From: Podarcis filfolensis
Lineage: Eukaryota
Strand: one strand, 5' to 3'
Length of the DNA stretch: 64,000 bases
NCBI GenBank assembly: GCA_964270895.1
Contig: OZ185447.1
A program made the translations under genes and the position numbers. The notes beneath the pieces were generated by a model. It had not been told where the DNA came from and did no database searches. It saw only the letters and a program-made list of their open reading frames with translations. Positions 10,701-25,600 of this stretch are shown one piece after another. Within the stretch, counting starts at the first letter, position 1. The number at the start of each line of letters is the position of its first letter.

Positions 10701-12966
10701 GAAATGCTGGACAATATATGTACCAATGTTTCTGAGATGAGAGATCCCCTTTCTTATTTGAACTTCAGAAGCTGAAACATTCTTTCAAATATTTATCCCT
10801 TCTGAAATGATTTCCTCTTTATTAATAGGTGATGCCAGTTTCTGTGTGCAATGACTACTGCCGTGCGGGCTATCAGAAGAAAAGGAAGGAAGGGCAGAAA
10901 TTTTGCTGCTATGATTGTACTCCATGTCCAGAAGGGAAGATTTCAAACCAGAATGGTATGTGACAGTTTTCATTGTACAAGATTAGCAAGTCTCTTTTGA
11001 AAACCACACTATCCTGCTTGGAGTGGTGTGAATATTTTATTGCTACTTTCCAGTAACACATCGTCATTATGTAAAAAAACAACAGAGCCTGGCGAAATCC
11101 CAAGCAGGTGAATATGAAAGTAAGACTCCCAAAAAAGATTTCATTGTACACATAATTTAAGTGAACCCAGTGGTTATTTTCCAAGTGTGCATACCCCTAA
11201 ACATTTTGTGAATCCAAGTTTGGCCTCATTGAGGTGTAGTATTTCAATATGCATAGGAAAAGGAGAGTACCCCTAAACCTTTGTTTAGGGGAAAAAAGCA
11301 CTGAGTGAACCTATAAAGTGGTAAAATGGTACAGAAGTTGTAGATTTGCAAATGATGTGTGTAGTCGGAATGAAACATGCTAGACATCATCCAGGGTGAT
11401 TAGGCCAGAACTGTATTCATTATGCTTCAGGGAAGAGGAAATTCCAACCAGCATGTGCTGTTTAAATGGCATTCCACTTGATGGTGTAGCTGTACACGAC
11501 ACCCTTCAGAGTTGAACAAGGTTGGAGCTTTGTATTTGGCAAGTAGGGAACTGTATATGTGGGGGGGGGGATAGGCAACATTGGGCCCCATCTGACCTGG
11601 TGGCATGCCTTGCTCTTATCACTTTATAGACCCTTTACAATCCACCCTATTCCTGCCCATCATTTTGACAAAGGCTTTAGAATGCCTAACAATGGCTACC
11701 AGCACTTACTGAAGGAAAGGCAAAAACATCCTAAATTGGAGACAATTAAATATGGGAGCAAAATCCTTTTTTTTTTTTTTTTTGGCTCTGTTAACTGTCC
11801 ACCCAAAAAAGCAAGGTTCCACTCACTATGCCATCTTGGGGCCACAGCATGGCCACTTAAAAAGATGCAAAAGACAAAACAAAAACACACACACACACAA
11901 CTGTGTCAGATTCAGCAGGAATGTAATGAGTAATTCAAATATACAACCTGCTCTCTGACAATCTAGAAGGTTCCAAATAGATCAACAGGATAAATAATGG
12001 CTACATAGTCAGCATAAAACACAGATGAATTGCAAATGGAGTTTAACTTCCTTCTGTTTGTCAGATATGGCTGACTGCTTCAGATGCCCTGAAGATCAGT
12101 ATGCAAACAAGAAGAAAGATGGATGCATCCCTAAAACTATCAACTTTCTTTCTTATGAAGAACCTTTAGGGATCAGCTTGGCCACACTTGCTCTTTCTAT
12201 TTCCCTGATCACAACTTTGGTGCTTGCAATGTTTATTCAGCACAAAAACACTCCCATTGTCAAAGCCAACAACAGGGATCTCACCTACGCTCTCCTCATT
12301 GCCCTCCTATTCTGCTTCCTCTCATCCTTTCTATTCATTGGACACCCTGGGAAAGTGACCTGCCTTCTTCGCCAACCAACTTTCAGCATTGTCTTCTCTG
12401 TGGCTGTTTCCTGTGTGTTGGCAAAGACGGTCACTGTAGTTGTAGCTTTCATGGCCACCAAGCCTGGATCCAGTATGAGGAAGTGGGTAGGGAAAAAACT
12501 ATCCAACTCCGTTGTCCTTTCCTGCTCCCTCATTCAAGTGATTATTTGTACTGGGTGGTTTATGACCTCTCCACCATTTCCAGATCAAGACATGCACTTA
12601 CTTACAGAAGAAACCATTGTGCAATGTAATGAAGGCTCAGTGACCATGTTTTACTGTGTCCTGGGCTACATGGGCATCCTGGCCATTGCCAGCTTCATTG
12701 CAGCATTTGCAGCTCGCAAATTACCAGACAGTTTTAATGAAGCCAAGTTCATTACCTTCAGCATGTTGCTGTTCTGCAGTGTTTGGCTTTCTTTTGTCCC
12801 AACATACCTGAGCACCAAAGGAAAATACATGGTGGTGGTGGAGATTTTCTCCATCTTGTCCTCCAGTGCTGGATTGCTGGTCTGCATCTTTGCCCCTAAA
12901 TGCTACATCATTATTCTGAAGCCAAATTTGAACAACAGGGAGCAATTGATAAGGAGAAGGATGTAA
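4782..12966 (+). CDS. Vomeronasal type-2 receptor (V2R / Vmn2r26-like family), gene A, 875 aa
   Basis: Exons 4782-4996, 6182-6473, 6897-7760, 8953-9180, 10829-10955, 12065-12966 (2628 nt), all GT-AG with consistent phase. Signal peptide, Venus-flytrap motifs ([24 protein letters not shown]; [13 protein letters not shown]), nine-Cys domain (SVC..C..FCCYDC..CP..DC..C..GC) and 7TM ([36 protein letters not shown]). Confidence 0.93.
9532..9731. mobile_element. Penelope-like element-derived insertion with long inverted repeat
   Basis: Inverted arms across 9529-9677 (CCAGTAGCACCTTAAAGACCAAC...GTGTGCATGCACACT) around a 13-nt spacer, plus a GACCAACACGGCTAC terminus. 11-bp TSD CGGGTTAACTT at 9521-9531 and 9732-9742. 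The paralogous site in gene B intron 4 is empty. Family assignment is from recalled similarity to reptile PLE ends. Confidence 0.65.
9958..10707 (-). mobile_element. 5'-truncated L2 LINE in gene A intron 4
   Basis: Absent from the paralogous introns of B, C and D. Contains typical L2 3' sequence (GGGCTTTAAAGGTC...GGGAGCCAGTGCAG; GCATTCTGCACC...TTCAAGGGCAGCCCCA) and an (AAC/AAT)-rich tail at the left end. Confidence 0.75.
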
Positions 12967-19600: not shown

Positions 19601-22600
19601 CAATTATATCACTGAGAATTATTATATTTCTGCCAGATCCTACAAATAAGAAAAACACATCATTTAAAAAGGTATGGATCTTTACAGCAAGGACTGATTT
19701 TATATCTATGGGTCTTCTTAAGGTTTGGAATGTTCTGCTCTTCCAGGGTTCCCTTTCCTTCACAATCCACTCACAAAATCTTCCAGCATTCAAGGAATTT
19801 CTTCAGAGCATAAAGCCTTCCCAGAGCCAGGGAGATGGTTTCATCAAAGGCTTCTGGGAGCAAGCATTTGACTGTATTCTTCCCAATTTCAATGCACCAA
19901 TGGAGGTCTATGGTATGTGTACTGGAGAGGAGAGGTTGCAGAGTCTTCCAAGGTCTCTGTTTGAAATGAGCATGACTGGTCACAGCTACAGCATCTATAA
20001 TGGTGTCTATGCTGTGGCTCATGCCTTGCATAACATTTACTCCCCTAGATCCAAGCAGAGAGCAATGGGAAAAAGTGAAAGATTAAAATTTCAGGATCTG
20101 GAGCCTTGGCAGGTATTGTTCTGAGAATGAAAAGAAAAAATATTATCATTATCGGCATGACTTTATCTACCACTGGAACTTAACACATTTCTGCTTGGTT
20201 ATCTGATAAAACTATTATTATTTAGAAGTCATCTGAAGGCAGCCCTGTATCAGGAATTTATTAATGTTTGATTATATTTTAATATGTGTTAGTAGCCTCC
20301 CAGAGTGAATGGGGCGACCTTGCCAGATGGCTGGAGTATATATAATAAATGATGATTATGATTATGATAAGATAGTATTCCAGAATATTATCAAGAAATT
20401 TAGTTCATCCACATAAACTGCTGCTAAGACTATAATAGCTAAGAATATCTGAATGTTTGGAGAAAATTTAGTCCATAGTAACTATGATTATGCCAACTTA
20501 TAAAAGAATACATATAAGCAAGCCTAACAGCTGTTAGGATATTTCCGTTCCACCTTAAAAGGGAGCAGGATGTTTGCCTGAATTCTGCTGTTAGAGTGTG
20601 CACTAAGCCAGAGGCTTAGTGTCGCTAAATTGCTGATACTGCGTGACTACGGGAGGTCGATGGATCGTCCGGCACCGAGCTTGGGGGCTCAGATGGACCT
20701 TATCTCCCTGGCAGTATCCCAACAACAGGTTATGGGCCCAGATTCACGGCACTTGCAGGAGAGTAAGACTGCGACAGACTGCTGAGGTATGTGTTGGAAA
20801 AGCGAAAGCAGAGGCTTTTCTGTTGCCACGGCAGCCTCTTTGATGTCCGGCTGGCCTAATTGGCCTGGGAGCCGAGCCAAGCAGGCTTCGTGATTTATGG
20901 GTGCCAAGATAAGGAGTCTCTGAAGTGAAGAAGAATCACGGCTGACGTTAAGAGCTGGAATGGAGTTTTTCCAAGCCTCTGAAGCTGCTGAGTGCCCAAA
21001 GTTAAATCGGGACAATTATGAGACCTGGGCAAAATGGTGTGAGAGTTTGCTGCGTCAGTTTGGAGTGTGGCATACTGTATGTGAAGCCCCTCCAGTTCCT
21101 CTGACAGGGAGATGGGAGGCTCAGAATTCGAGAGCCATAGACGTAATAGTCTTGTCCGTCTCTCTGGAGGAAATTGCTACGCTAGCTGGCAACACGACTG
21201 CACGTCAGATGTGGAATGCTTTGAAGATAGCCCATCTGCCAGTCATCCCAGCCCAGAGTTTGACTGCATCGGAGGTCCTGGCTGTTTCCCAGAATGCGAG
21301 TGAATGCAGGGATGCCGAGGGCACCGGTTGCAAGCTGCAGGGGGAGCTGACTGTGATGTCATCCCCGGCAGCATTCCAGCCTCCAGGGGGAGCCAAGGAG
21401 TCGGCAGCTGAGAGCTCTGTTTCCCATGGGAACCAAGGTCAACTTTGCAGAGGCCGGAAGGCCAGAAGTAAACAGAGACGGATGCCTGCAGATGGCCCGA
21501 AGCAGAAGGGGGGTGAAAGGCCCACGCCAGTGGAAAACAAGGCTTTGTTTGCTGGCACAGCTTCACCAAAGGCTAAAGGCACGTCTGATGGCCAGGAGCA
21601 GGGGGGCAAGTTGCAAAAGCCCACGCCAGTGGAAAACAAGGTTATGTTTGCTGGCACAGCTCCACCAAAGGCTAAAGGCACGTCTGATGGCCAGGAGCAG
21701 GGGGGCAAGCAGCAAAAGCCCATGCCAGTGGAAAACAAGGTTTTGTTTGCTGGCACTGCTTCACCGAAGGCCAAGGCGAGGTTTATAGTGGATTCAGGGT
21801 GCACGCGCCATATCACCAAAGACCGCCATCTGTTCATCTCCTTCACACCTCAAGAAGGAGAGATCCACCTGGCTGATGGAAGGACTTTGCAAGCTGCAGG
21901 AGTTGGGACTGTGAAACTTGCAAGTCTGCATACTACCATCAGAGATGTACTTTTTGTTCCAGGAGCTGCGGACAATTTGCTTAGTGTCCCACAGCTGAAT
22001 GGGCGTGGTTTTGAAATTACCTTCAAGAGGACTGTCTGTGTCATCAGAAAAGGCAAAGAGGACTTTTTGCATGCAAAGTTGATGGATGGTTTGTTCTGTC
22101 TAACTTATGATGACAATGTTGTTATATCTAATGCTGATTCTTGTTGTGTTGCACAAACTAACAAGGTTCTTCATGCAGGATGCATTCACGATGCACATAG
22201 AAGATTTTGTCACCTCTCTTGGCAAGCGCTAGCCAAGATGCCTGAGTTGGTTGAAGGTTTGGACATCAAACCTTGTAAATTTCACATGAAATGTGTATCT
22301 TGTGCAGAGAACAAGGTGAAGGTTGCTCCAAAAGGCAAGGAGTCTAGCAGGCAGGCTTCCAAACCCTACCAGCTAGTTCACGCAGACCTGGTTGGGCCTC
22401 TAGCGCCCTCTTTGGGAGGAGCAAGGTACTTCATGGTTCTAATTGATTCTTTTTCCAGGTACATTCATGTGTTTGTGCTCGAGCAGAAATCGCAAGCATT
22501 TCCTAGGTTCAAGGCATTCTGTGCTTGGTTGGAGAATGCTCATGGTAAACGTATTGGCTGTCTGTTTACTGATCGGGGCGGGGAGTTCACTTCTCAGCAG

Positions 22601-25600
22601 TTTGAAGCTTTCCTGACTGAGAAGGGAATCCAGCATGACTTGTCAACGCCTAGATCGCCATGGATGAATGGGCTTGCGGAGAGAGCAAATCAAACGTTGC
22701 TGCAAGGAATAAAAACCTTGTTGCATGATGCCAACCTCCCTGAGAAGTTTTGGGGGGAGGCTCTCTCAAATTTAGTTTACACTTTTAATCGCAGACTGTC
22801 ATCACCTATTGGCTGCACTCCCTATGAGAAAATGTTTGGTAAGAAACCTAACACCAAGCACTTGAGAATCTTTGGTTCTGACATGTGGGTACACACCCCA
22901 CAAAGCAACAAGCTTGGGAAGCGTGGGGCACATGGTTTGTTCATGGGGTACGAAAAAGGTGCATACAGAGTATGGATGACTAACTCTAAATCCATAAAGT
23001 TCACAAGGAGTGTTGAGTACAATCCTAAGTGGGGGGGAAATGTGGGAATTTTCCAGAGTTACCCAGAGGAGGATGAAGGTGATGTGAAGAAAGCAGATCA
23101 TGCTGAGAAAGCTGAGGAAACTGAGGATGATGATGATGATGATGATCAGAGTTCGGATTCCAGTTCAGTGGGCGGCGCTGCTGCTGCTGTCAGTGACAGT
23201 GATGACACAGCAGACTACAAGAGCGCAAAGGCCTCAGTCAGACCATCTGATGCGTCTGACAATGAACTGGAAGAACCACTGTTCACCATTGGTCACTTTT
23301 CTCCTAAGAAGGAGGAGATGAGTCCAGAAGACTTGCGTCTAGTTCGCAGGTCTGAAAGGGCGACCAAAGGCAGACCTCCAAAGAGATTTGCTGATGAGTT
23401 TGCTAAGACGGCAACTGCTGTTCTTAGTAGCTCAGAGAAGGTGTGGGAACCTTCAAGCTTCAAAGAGGTTCAGGAGTTAACCTCTAAAGATGCTGAGCCT
23501 TGGCTTAATGCCATGAAGGCTGAAGTTGATTCCTTGAACAGGAACCAGACTTGGGAGCTGGTACCGGTAGTCCCAGGAATGAGACTGGTTGGCAGCAAAT
23601 GGGTCTTCAAGGCCAAGACAGACCAGAATGGCAAGGTTGTCAGACACAAAGCCAGATTGGTTGCCAGAGGTTTTTCACAGGTACCAGGGCAGGATTACCA
23701 CGAGACCTACTCACCCACGGTCAAATATGAGAGCATTCGGCTGATGCTCAAGATCGCTGCGGAGGAGAAACTGCATGTTTCCCATCATGACATAAATACA
23801 GCTTTTTTGTACGGGATTTTGGGGGAGGAGCTATACATGCTTCCACCTGACGGGATGCAGATACAGAAGGGAATGGTCTGTAAACTGCGGAAATCCTTAT
23901 ATGGTCTCAAGCAGAGTGCCAGGTGTTGGAACACAAAACTCACTGAAACGTTGCTTTCTCTAGGTTTTCACCAGGGCAAAGCTGATCCGTGTGTGTTTGT
24001 CAAGGAGGAGGGACAAAACAAACTGTATTGTTTATGTTTTGTTGATGATCTTCTGATGTTTTGGAAGAATCAGGCTTTCTACCAAAGCACCCTAGCTCAG
24101 CTGAAGGAGCACTTTGACATGAAGGATCTTGGTGAGGTATCCAACTATCTTTCTCTACAGGTGGAGAGGGACCAAGCAGGTAATTTTCTGGTACACCAAA
24201 CACAGAAAATTGCTGATGTATTAACCAGGTTGAATTTGGTTGATGCAAACCCAGCAGACACACCGATGGTGACAGGTTACCAGGTAGACAGTACTGCTGA
24301 AGCGTTTTCTGACACAACGCTGTACAGATGCATTCTAGGCAAGTTGAATTTCATTGCTAGATGTTCAAGACCTGACATTGCTGTAAGCACTAACCTGCTT
24401 AGCAGACATGCTAACAATCCTACTGTTCAGGATTGGAAAGCTCTGAAGCGCATAGCCCGGTATTTGAAAGGGACTATGCACTACAGGCTGAGGTTCACCA
24501 GTCAGAAGACTGGAGGTCTTGAAATCTTTGCAGATGCAAGTTTTGGAAGTGACACCACGGATGGTACAAGCACTTCTGGAGTATGCTACATGTACAACCA
24601 CTGCCTGTTTGACTGGTTGTGCAAAAAGCAGACGACAGTTAGCCTAAGTTCCTGTGAAGCAGAGCTCAATGCTCTGTCATTTTCACTCATGGATTGTGAA
24701 TGGTTGATGCAACTGTTTAAGGACATTGGGGTTTCTGTGAAATGTCCTATACAAGACAATAGATCTTGTTTGGCTTTGCTGAACTCGGAGAGTTGCAAGC
24801 AAAGGACCAAGTACTTGCAGATTAAGCTACATCGTGCAAGAGGGTGTATTCAGAAAGGACTCATTCAGGTGTCCTACATGCCAGGAAATGAAATTCCTGC
24901 TGATCTGTTGTCTAAGGTTGTTAACAGAGAACAACTTAAGGTTTACGTACAAAGGTTGCAATTGGGTTGAACCACAGGTACTACAGGTTACACGGAAAGG
25001 GGGAGGATGTTAGGATATTTCCGTTCCACCTTAAAAGGGAGCAGGATGTTTGTGTCACAGCCTGCGTATTTCCTGTTCACAGGATGTTTATGTTTGTCTG
25101 TTCCTTTCGTTTTCTGCTGTTTTGCCTGAGCAGTCGGAGCAGACGGTCATGTCTTCTTTTGTTCTGACCTACGCAAAATAAACTGTAAATATGCTGTCCT
25201 GCTGTGCAACTTTTGCTGTGTGAATTCTGCTGTTAGAGTGTGCACTAAGCCAGAGGCTTAGTGTCGCTAAATTGCTGATACTGCGTGACTACGGGAGGTC
25301 GATGGATCGTCCGGCACCGAGCTTGGGGGCTCAGATGGACCTTATCTCCCTGGCAGTATCCCAACAACAGCTCTATGGAAAAAAACATAATTTTTTGTTA
25401 TATTTTGGAAGAATAAGTTCAGTTATAATGCCCAAGCTTATGCTGCTTTCAACTTGTAGTAATAGTATTTATTTAGGCTGTCTTTAATTTCTTTTATTTA
25501 TTGTTAAAAGAAAAAAAATAAGGACTTTATCACATTAGGAATCAGAAGTTCTGTTTAAATGGCATTCCAAATTGTATTCACTGAAAAAATAATAATGTTT

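What the first reader, a model, noticed from the sequence alone, without database searches (positions are those of the whole stretch)
20653..20667. Copia LTR carries an exact 15-nt SENSE copy of the tRNA-iMet segment just 3' of its primer region
Seen: GAGGTCGATGGATCG occurs in the presumed U5 part of both LTRs (20653-20667 and 25295-25309), 60 nt upstream of the PBS GGTTATGGGCCCAG. Established, with the tRNA sequence recalled from memory: vertebrate tRNA-iMet reads ...CTGGGCCCATAACC-CA-GAGGTCGATGGATCG-AAACCATC.... The PBS therefore pairs with about nt 27-40, while the LTR motif equals about nt 43-57 (variable loop plus T arm), the part removed or left unused in half-tRNA priming. A chance 15-mer match between a 359-bp LTR and a ~75-nt tRNA is roughly 1e-5 to 1e-4 by simple counting. 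Known helper boxes (Ty1 boxes, HIV PAS) are antisense to the tRNA, whereas this one is sense. Inference, three options: (a) the minus-strand strong-stop cDNA becomes complementary to the tRNA 3' portion, so an uncleaved or internally primed tRNA, or the released 3' half, could clamp the cDNA or aid strand transfer; (b) the element RNA mimics the tRNA 3' half to help unfold or process the primer; (c) it is a fossil of RT template-switching onto the tRNA. A weaker supporting hint is ATTCTGCT (20582-20589), which could pair with the tRNA 5' end AGCAGAGU with one G-U. I do not know of a description of this arrangement, but cannot search the literature.
Basis: partly seen in the sequence, partly recalled or inferred. 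Interest (0 to 1): 0.78.

Follow-up and report, generated by a model that had tools for sequence, protein, structure and literature searches.

The report
Primer-tRNA scrap inside a lizard Copia LTR
A young Copia-type jumping gene of a lizard carries, in both of its terminal repeats, an exact 15-letter same-sense copy of the middle of the very tRNA it uses as primer; it is real and not chance, but it looks like a copying accident of reverse transcription that was inherited, not a working part.

Summary
Observation confirmed. The 15-mer is exact at 20653-20667 and 25295-25309, 60 nt upstream of the anticodon-arm primer-binding site (PBS, 20728-20741). It equals initiator tRNA-Met positions 43-57 as printed in PMC8216282. 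Chance is about 4e-5 (0 of 20,000 shuffles).

The host element is a very young, insertion-polymorphic Ty1/copia element with an intact 1336-aa gag-pol and a 5-bp target-site duplication (TSD).

- **No wider tRNA likeness.** The flanks show no further similarity to the tRNA (p 0.37-0.99). Rfam sees nothing tRNA-like.
- **No pairing signal.** The tRNA 3' part pairs with U5 no better than with shuffled U5.
- **Not a general feature.** 70 other families with the same PBS, and the two closest relatives, lack the motif.
- **Suggestive boundaries.** The copy ends exactly before A58, the m1A58 reverse-transcriptase stop. It starts 2-3 nt after the primer's last paired base.

A working cis-element is not excluded (about 0.17). 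Conservation among family copies could not be measured.

The scan earlier noted another sense tRNA-iMet piece in a different Copia element of this genome (s1-287790).

The parts
20527..20531 (+). Target-site duplication ACAGC, 5' copy
   Evidence: The same 5 nt recur at 25367-25371. A contig of run X1 joins 20525 to 25366 with 5 shared letters, which is the empty site.
20532..20724 (+). 5' LTR, truncated (TG..CA). 20532-20576 is the U3 start, CC is a filler, and 20579-20724 is U5. It lacks the 168 bp present at 25053-25220 in the 3' LTR.
   Evidence: The retained parts are 100% identical to the 3' LTR.
20582..20589 (+).
   Evidence: 6-8-nt matches to the tRNA are expected by chance. 40% of shuffled LTRs hold an 8-mer, and the local-alignment p-values are 0.37-0.78.
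20653..20667 (+). Sense 15-mer equal to tRNA-iMet positions 43-57 (last anticodon-stem base, variable loop, 5' strand of the T stem, first four T-loop bases), copy in the 5' LTR U5
20728..20741 (+). Primer-binding site, complementary to tRNA-iMet positions 27-40 (copia/Ty5 type), after a 3-nt ACA spacer
20960..24970 (+). Intact gag-pol ORF of 1336 aa, with the domain order gag, protease region, integrase, RT
   Evidence: Pfam finds Retrotran_gag_2, Pol_BBD, rve, SH3_retrovirus and RVT_2.
24994..25007 (+). Polypurine tract GGAAAGGGGGAGGA, abutting the 3' LTR
   Evidence: Read directly from the sequence
25008..25366 (+). 3' LTR, full length, 359 bp
   Evidence: boundary set by the TSD and the empty site
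25177..25182 (+). AATAAA polyadenylation signal. It places the R/U5 border near 25200, so the 15-mer lies in U5.
   Evidence: Sequence. Sense-strand RNA depth falls from 7.3 to 0.73 between bins 25017-25187 and 25188-25358 in run X23.
25295..25309 (+). Sense 15-mer, copy in the 3' LTR U5
25367..25371 (+). Target-site duplication ACAGC, 3' copy

Best explanation
The 15-mer is a templated insertion. At some point in this family's history its reverse transcriptase, while copying U5 during minus-strand synthesis inside the particle, switched onto a piece of the mature primer tRNA-iMet. It copied positions 57 down to 43 and then returned to the element RNA. Because U5 is copied into both LTRs at every cycle, the scrap has been inherited by all descendants.

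The copied stretch is the part of the tRNA that a reverse transcriptase can read between two landmarks. One is the methylated A58, a hard stop. The other is the cut in the anticodon stem that makes the half-tRNA primer.

What is shown: the identity, the sense orientation, the sharp edges, the position in U5, and the absence of the motif elsewhere.

What is inferred: the template switch, the use of a modified or cleaved tRNA as template, and the lack of function.
For: - **Non-chance and tRNA-derived.** The match is 15/15, with an expectation of 4e-5 and 0 of 20,000 shuffles.
- **Sharp edges.** Neither flank of the LTR aligns to the neighbouring tRNA parts better than to shuffled tRNA (p 0.37, 0.78, 0.99, 0.40, 0.91). 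Exactly this piece was captured; it is not a decayed whole tRNA.
- **Meaningful boundaries.** The 3' edge is G57, next to A58. m1A58 is the RT stop that ends plus-strand strong-stop DNA in retroviruses (abstract of PMC8599865). The 5' edge, G43, lies 3 nt beyond position 40, the last tRNA base paired to the PBS. The copia primer is the 5' fragment of this tRNA (Kikuchi 1986, as cited in PMC10275265).
- **No sign of a required function.** The motif, even with 2 mismatches, is absent from 673 kb of loci. These include 70 non-redundant families with the same ACA-GGTTATGGGCCCAG junction and the two closest relatives, L001 and L002. The longest sense matches to the tRNA in their U5 regions (up to 10 nt, 2 of 70) fit chance.
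- **No structural signal.** Rfam finds no tRNA-like fold, the RNA fold z-score is -0.45, and the tRNA 3' part pairs with U5 no better than with shuffled U5.
- **An unchecked lead.** Another Copia element of the same genome was noted with a sense copy of the tRNA-iMet 3' half (s1-287790). That would make such captures recurrent here.
- **A possible RT jump in this copy.** Its 5' LTR has a 168-bp deletion with a 2-nt filler. That is compatible with an RT jump during plus-strand strong-stop synthesis, but it could equally be a later deletion.
Against: - There is no microhomology at either junction, which an ordinary homology-guided switch would leave. An end-to-end jump onto a tRNA fragment has to be assumed.
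- The two bases before G43 are GG, not the tRNA's CA. The 5' edge therefore does not coincide exactly with the presumed cleavage site.
- The piece is perfect, including two CpGs, in a family with copies more than 10% diverged in run X1. This may mean constraint rather than youth, and I could not measure it.
If correct, m1A58 is not an absolute barrier for these enzymes.
- No sister family with an alignable U5 lacking the 15 nt was found, so the piece is not shown to be an insertion.
Confidence: 0.55

Rival explanations
1. The 15-mer is a working cis-element of half-tRNA priming in this lineage. Either the minus-strand strong-stop cDNA, which becomes complementary to tRNA positions 43-57, grips the uncleaved tRNA or its released 3' fragment. 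Or the RNA copy mimics the variable-loop and T-arm side of the tRNA, to open the tRNA or to bind a factor that recognises initiator tRNA.
For: The identity is exact, including two CpGs, in a family with older diverged copies. The motif lies in U5, so it is present in the strong-stop cDNA. It includes the initiator-specific A54. There is a precedent for a sense tRNA mimic beside a PBS, the HIV-1 tRNA-like element that binds LysRS (PMC5113203, PMC5689005).
Against: The motif is absent from 70 other families with the same PBS and from the closest relatives, so half-tRNA priming does not need it. There is no partner for the T-stem strand, no tRNA-like fold, and no above-chance pairing between the tRNA 3' part and U5. 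Conservation was not measured.
Confidence: 0.17
2. The 15-mer is a relocated remnant. An ancestor primed from the tRNA 3' end carried a sense copy of the tRNA 3' half in its leader, as noted for another Copia of this genome. When the lineage switched to the anticodon-arm PBS further downstream, the old leader became part of U5, and only this piece survived.
For: PBS type does switch in this clade. The closest relative, P0001/L001 (60% identity), has TGGTAGCAGAGG, the 3'-end type. AGCCAGAGG lies 36 nt upstream of the 15-mer, and AGCAGAGG lies at 20807-20814.
Against: The 8-9-nt pieces are at chance level. Neutral decay would not leave 15 perfect bases next to 19 fully randomised ones.
Confidence: 0.1
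3. The 15-mer comes from a DNA-level or SINE-type origin: a tRNA-derived SINE, a tRNA pseudogene fragment or a Helenus-like tRNA module inserted into the LTR and then mostly decayed.
For: Partial tRNA-like sequences in LTRs are reported as not rare, and Helenus and Cassandra carry small-RNA modules in their LTRs (PMC10886601).
Against: There is no box A, and only half of box B. No flanking similarity is seen and there is no Rfam hit. The piece matches the element's own primer tRNA exactly, whereas Helenus modules are unrelated to their primer. The element is autonomous and Pol II-type, with an AATAAA signal.
Confidence: 0.1
4. The match is pure chance, surfaced by a very large scan.
For: The scan reads very many windows and LTR elements. 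At 4e-5 per element, a few thousand tRNA-iMet-primed elements would give about 0.1-0.2 such matches.
Against: The match is to the element's own primer tRNA, not to any tRNA, and in 20,000 shuffles no 15-mer arose. Its 3' edge falls exactly at the A58 landmark, about 1 chance in 60. A second sense tRNA-iMet piece is noted in the same genome (unchecked).
Confidence: 0.08

Closest known systems
Drosophila copia / yeast Ty5 half-tRNA priming
   Same: The PBS GGTTATGGGCCCAG lies next to the 5' LTR and is complementary to the anticodon stem-loop of tRNA-iMet. The element belongs to the Ty1/copia superfamily and has a 5-bp TSD.
   Different: Neither the papers found nor 70 metagenomic families with this PBS show a sense piece of the same tRNA in U5.
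Ty1 boxes 0/1/2.1 and the HIV-1 primer activation signal
   Same: These are extra tRNA-related sequences near the PBS or in U5 of a tRNA-primed retroelement.
   Different: They are antisense to the tRNA and pair with its T or D arm (my own knowledge). This piece is sense and cannot pair with the segment it copies. The relative L001 does have antisense pieces: an extended PBS and a 10-mer in its LTR.
HIV-1 tRNA-like element (TLE)
   Same: It is a sense mimic of the primer tRNA beside the PBS (PMC5113203, PMC5689005).
   Different: The TLE mimics the anticodon arm and the overall fold, and it binds LysRS. Here there is only a 15-nt unstructured piece of the variable loop and T arm, with no fold signal.
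Tf1/Tf2 self-priming
   Same: It is a sense copy of the primer carried in the element's own 5' region (my own knowledge).
   Different: The Tf1 self-primer is complementary to the PBS. This 15-mer covers positions 43-57, not 27-40, and so cannot pair with the PBS.
Helenus / Cassandra (small-RNA-derived modules in LTRs)
   Same: tRNA-derived sequence sits inside LTRs. Kojima 2024 states that not a few LTRs hold partial tRNA-like sequence.
   Different: Those are near-complete Pol III promoter modules in non-autonomous TRIMs and are unrelated to the primer tRNA. Here it is a 15-nt fragment of the primer tRNA itself, in an autonomous element.
Earlier scan note s1-287790 (same genome)
   Same: It describes a sense copy of tRNA-iMet in a lacertid Copia element, read as an inherited reverse-transcription accident.
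   Different: That copy is the 3' half with CCA. It lies downstream of a 3'-end-type PBS and folds back on it. Ours is an internal piece in U5 that cannot pair with its PBS. I could not see that sequence.

Membership tests
Ty1/copia LTR retrotransposon | gag-pol with the integrase before the RT, and an RVT_2-type RT | tested here: met
   Pfam places rve at residues 467-567, RVT_2 at 862-1104 and Retrotran_gag_2 at 27-106.
Ty1/copia LTR retrotransposon | Two LTRs with TG..CA ends, a 5-bp TSD, a PBS after the 5' LTR and a PPT before the 3' LTR | tested here: met
   (empty-site contig). The 5' LTR carries a 168-bp deletion.
Half-tRNA (copia/Ty5-type) priming | A PBS complementary to the anticodon stem-loop of tRNA-iMet rather than to its 3' end | tested here: met
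   A 14/14 antisense match to positions 27-40
Half-tRNA (copia/Ty5-type) priming | A cleaved 5' tRNA fragment is the actual primer | not testable with these tools
   This needs mapping of the cDNA-primer junction in particles.
Auxiliary primer-contact boxes (Ty1 boxes, HIV PAS) | Complementary (antisense) to a tRNA segment outside the PBS | tested here: not met
   The 15-mer is sense. The longest antisense match in the LTR is 6 nt.
tRNA-like element / tRNA mimic (HIV-1 TLE type) | Folds into a tRNA-like or arm-like structure | tested here: not met
   No Rfam tRNA hit at E up to 10. There is no partner for the T-stem strand. The fold z-score is -0.45.
Self-primer (Tf1 type) | The sense segment is complementary to the element's own PBS | tested here: not met
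   The 15-mer equals positions 43-57, whereas the PBS pairs with 27-40.
Helenus / TRIMp3 | A tRNA-like module with box A and box B in the LTR of a short non-autonomous element | tested here: not met
   Only GGATCG of box B is present, and there is no box A or flank similarity. The element is autonomous.
Conserved cis-element of its family | Evolves more slowly than the flanking U5 among family copies | tested here: inconclusive
   The family is present in runs of six organism labels. However, the read-laying output showed only 40 of 535 difference rows, none of them in U5, and the tool's single call was used.

The most novel reading that the evidence does not exclude
The 15-mer is kept by selection as a new kind of primer helper for half-tRNA priming. 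Once U5 is copied, the strong-stop cDNA forms a perfect 15-bp hybrid with positions 43-57 of tRNA-iMet. This hybrid could hold or dispose of the tRNA 3' fragment, for example by offering it to the element's RNase H. Alternatively, the RNA copy acts as a decoy for a factor that reads the initiator T arm.
Probability: 0.15. Interest if true: 0.75.

Novelty: new variant of a known kind. Interest (0 to 1): 0.36.

Why it matters
If it is a relic, it is a small but neat genomic record. The element's reverse transcriptase copied a piece of its own mature primer tRNA, and the edges of that piece coincide with an RNA modification (m1A58) and with the primer cleavage region. Together with the other sense tRNA-iMet piece noted in this genome, it suggests that such captures recur in lacertid Copia elements. 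A survey of them could show where primer tRNAs are cut and where reverse transcriptases stop in vivo. If it proved to be conserved and functional, it would be the first sense-oriented primer-tRNA helper described for the copia group, and it would bear on the unsolved question of how the half-tRNA primer is made.

Tried and rejected
**Searches for other copies of the family**
- Exact look-ups of the gag-pol and of two small ORFs across U5 and the leader found nothing.
- A gag-fragment protein search found nothing.
- An RT-fragment search found only a 944-nt Logan contig inside pol, P0121.
- There is no other copy or solo LTR in the window.
- The pattern 15-mer-gap-PBS found nothing in viral contigs or genome contigs.
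- The three viral-contig hits to the PBS pattern are chance hits in phage-like coding DNA.

**Checks on the tRNA likeness**
- Collinear small sense matches to the tRNA in U5 that I saw by eye (AGAGTG, GCGTG) are not significant.
- A U5 alignment with the closest relative L001 is not meaningful.
- The unrestricted duplex prediction of the whole tRNA against the leader gave uninformative long structures. Only the restricted test against shuffles is used.
- ARAGORN found no tRNA gene in the window. Run in a script on all 125 fetched loci, it also reported none, and a motif search found no tRNA-iMet gene among them. The host tRNA could therefore not be read.

**Reads and the tRNA reference**
- Read laying gave no usable per-site data for U5.
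- The tRNA reference was the 72-nt sequence printed in PMC8216282, a paper on the human enzyme. I gave it once as plain letters to DNA alignment and read it from that alignment afterwards. No human contig was handled.
Full report
**1. Observation**

The 15-mer GAGGTCGATGGATCG occurs exactly twice in the window, at 20653-20667 and 25295-25309 on the + strand. No further site matches with up to 2 mismatches on either strand. GGTTATGGGCCCAG lies at 20728-20741, 60 nt after the first copy.

Two papers give the initiator tRNA-Met as a 72-nt sequence. In it, the reverse complement of this PBS is followed by CA and then by the 15-mer (PMC8216282 and PMC8274982). I gave that printed sequence once to DNA alignment and used it from the stored alignment afterwards. 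In standard tRNA numbering the PBS pairs with positions 27-40, and the 15-mer equals 43-57: the last base of the anticodon stem, the variable loop, the 5' strand of the T stem and the first four T-loop bases.

The expected number of 15-nt matches between the LTR and the tRNA, on either strand, is 4e-5. In 20,000 first-order Markov (dinucleotide-frequency) randomisations of the LTR, no 15-mer arose and 14-mers arose in 1e-4.

**2. The element**

- It is a Ty1/copia LTR retrotransposon spanning 20532-25366.
- It has one intact ORF of 1336 aa at 20960-24970. Pfam finds Retrotran_gag_2, Pol_BBD, rve, SH3_retrovirus and RVT_2, with the integrase before the RT.
- The polypurine tract is at 24994-25007, abutting the 3' LTR.
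- The 3' LTR is 25008-25366 (359 bp, TG..CA).
- The TSD is ACAGC (20527-20531 and 25367-25371).
- A contig of run X1 joins 20525 to 25366 with 5 shared letters. That is the empty site, so the insertion is polymorphic or absent in that sample, and very young.
- The retained LTR parts are 100% identical.
- The 5' LTR lacks 25053-25220 and has CC in its place.
- AATAAA is at 25177-25182. In the stranded RNA run X23, sense-strand depth falls tenfold after bin 25017-25187. The 15-mer, 113 nt further on, therefore lies in U5. This is an inference; no poly(A) sites were mapped.
- Runs with six organism labels hold the family. The internal region is covered almost only by reads of one orientation in X23, so the family is transcribed.
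I did not verify that.

**3. Is more of the tRNA there?**

No. With the 15-mer set aside, I aligned the upstream LTR and the downstream U5 to the tRNA's 5' and 3' parts. They aligned no better than to shuffled tRNA (p 0.37, 0.78, 0.99, 0.40, 0.91).

40% of shuffled LTRs hold an 8-mer match.
- Rfam finds no tRNA-like structure in the LTR at E up to 10.
- The U5-PBS RNA is not unusually structured, with a z-score of -0.45.

The tRNA-derived piece is therefore exactly 15 nt long, with sharp edges.

**4. Is it a general or conserved device?**

*The closest relatives.* The closest protein, P0001, is 60% identical. It sits on a 4.9-kb contig (L001) whose PBS is TGGTAGCAGAGG. That is the 3'-end type for the same tRNA, followed by further antisense similarity to the T arm. 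PBS type has therefore switched within this clade. An Elgaria copy (L002, 58% identity) has a different sequence at the PBS position. Neither relative has the 15-mer, and their U5 regions do not align with ours.

*Other families with the same junction.* A scan of metagenome contigs for ACA-GGTTATGGGCCCAG returned 120 loci. These yield 70 non-redundant families with at least 150 nt upstream.
- None has a variable-loop/T-arm-like sense motif in the 400 nt upstream, apart from two unrelated hits (L034; L086, inside a tRNA-like repeat unit).
- Their longest sense matches to the tRNA are 5-10 nt, with two at 10, where about one is expected.
- Across all 673 kb of fetched loci there is no hit to the 15-mer with up to 2 mismatches.

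Half-tRNA priming evidently does not need this motif.

*Conservation inside the family.* This could not be measured. Read laying can be called once, and its table showed 40 of 535 difference rows, none of them in U5. The indel table shows variation beside the motif (20674, 20683, 25330) but not inside it. All protein-based routes to other copies failed.

**5. Mechanism**

*Options (a) and (b).* A sense copy cannot pair with the tRNA segment it copies. It could pair only with the T-stem 3' strand. The best duplex of tRNA 58-76 with U5 is -13.2 kcal/mol, at another site, and is matched or beaten by 59% of shuffles. The cDNA of U5 is by definition complementary to tRNA 43-57, so option (a) cannot be excluded by computation. 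Nothing found here supports it.

*What speaks for a copying accident.* The evidence is the geometry of the piece.
- It ends at G57, next to A58. In mature tRNA this is m1A58, the stop that ends plus-strand strong-stop DNA (abstract of PMC8599865).
- It begins 3 nt after position 40, the last tRNA base paired with the PBS. The copia primer is the 5' fragment of this tRNA (Kikuchi 1986, cited in PMC10275265).
- An internal tRNA fragment bounded by the anticodon-stem cut and the T loop would, if copied end to end by a template-jumping RT, give exactly such an insertion.

*Weak points.* There is no microhomology at the junctions. The two bases before G43 are GG, not CA. The piece is not shown to be an insertion.

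*A related lead.* The same genome was noted to hold a Copia element with a sense tRNA-iMet 3' half after its PBS. That piece was read by another agent as an inherited RT accident (s1-287790). Two further first-reader notes (s1-423825, s1-423835) point to tRNA-iMet-related pieces in other elements. I treat these as leads only.

**6. Comparison with the known**

- Anticodon-arm priming by tRNA-iMet is known for copia, Ty5 and several fungal and plant Copia lineages.
- Antisense helper boxes (Ty1) and the PAS (HIV-1) differ in orientation.
- Sense mimics exist: the HIV-1 TLE and Tf1 self-primers. They mimic the anticodon arm or the PBS-complementary end, and they fold.
- tRNA-like modules in LTRs (Helenus) are whole Pol III promoter units unrelated to the primer.
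- In seven full-text searches I found no description of a sense internal fragment of the element's own primer tRNA in U5.

I rate it a new variant of a known kind, tRNA-derived sequence in an LTR, most likely without function.

**7. Verdict**

| Reading | Probability |
|---|---|
| Inherited template-switch relic | 0.55 |
| Working cis-element | 0.17 |
| Relocated remnant after a PBS switch | 0.10 |
| SINE-type or DNA-level origin | 0.10 |
| Chance | 0.08 |

Interest is moderate to low (0.36). It would rise sharply if family-wide data showed constraint on the 15-mer.

Noticed in passing
window 20577-20578 versus 25053-25220: The 5' LTR lacks 168 bp that the 3' LTR has, with a CC filler at the junction. 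The missing part runs from just after a TATA-like TTAAAAG to just past the AATAAA, which is roughly R. A deletion confined to the 5' LTR fits an RT jump during plus-strand strong-stop synthesis, or a later deletion. This copy is probably unable to replicate despite its intact ORF.
   Followed up: partly
window 20525/25366: A contig of run X1 joins the two flanks with 5 shared letters, which is the empty site. The insertion is therefore polymorphic or species-specific. Word depth over the element in X1 is in the thousands, so the family looks high-copy.
   Followed up: partly
window 21516-21812: Three tandem 99-bp repeats (94% and 65% identical to the first) lie inside gag and add 33-aa repeats.
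   Followed up: no
window 25369, loose end in run X15 (organism E): A contig running from U5 into the PBS reads GGTTTCGGGCCCAG instead of GGTTATGGGCCCAG. These two changes in the part that pairs with the anticodon loop make either a dead copy or a PBS variant.
   Followed up: no
L001 328-337 and 470-580: The closest relative uses the 3'-end PBS TGGTAGCAGAGG, with further antisense similarity to the T arm. It is followed by three degenerate repeats of about 33 nt. Its LTR also holds an antisense 10-mer to tRNA-iMet positions 42-51 (chance about 0.09), which could be a PAS-like box.
   Followed up: partly
L009, L010, L050, L059, L082-L084, L086, L089, L090, L102, L108 (around the PBS match): In these metagenome contigs the copia-type PBS sits between a box-A-like piece (TGGCGTAGTTGG) and a T-arm/box-B-like piece (GGTCGCGGGTTCGAGATTCGCC). 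In L086, two PBS copies flank a 218-nt TG..CA unit. This looks like Helenus-type TRIM LTRs in tandem, with the tRNA-like Pol III unit split across LTR-PBS-LTR.
   Followed up: partly
L124 (after the PBS match at 11820): Here the complementarity to tRNA-iMet continues beyond the 14-nt PBS into the D arm (CACGCT..CCACTGCGC). It is an extended PBS covering most of the tRNA 5' half.
   Followed up: no
window 20608-20624 and 20800-20823: There are two small hairpins, one in U5 and one in the leader. They share CAGAGGCTT; the leader one holds AGCAGAGG, which is antisense to the tRNA 3' acceptor strand. This may be a remnant of a 3'-end PBS, or chance.
   Followed up: no
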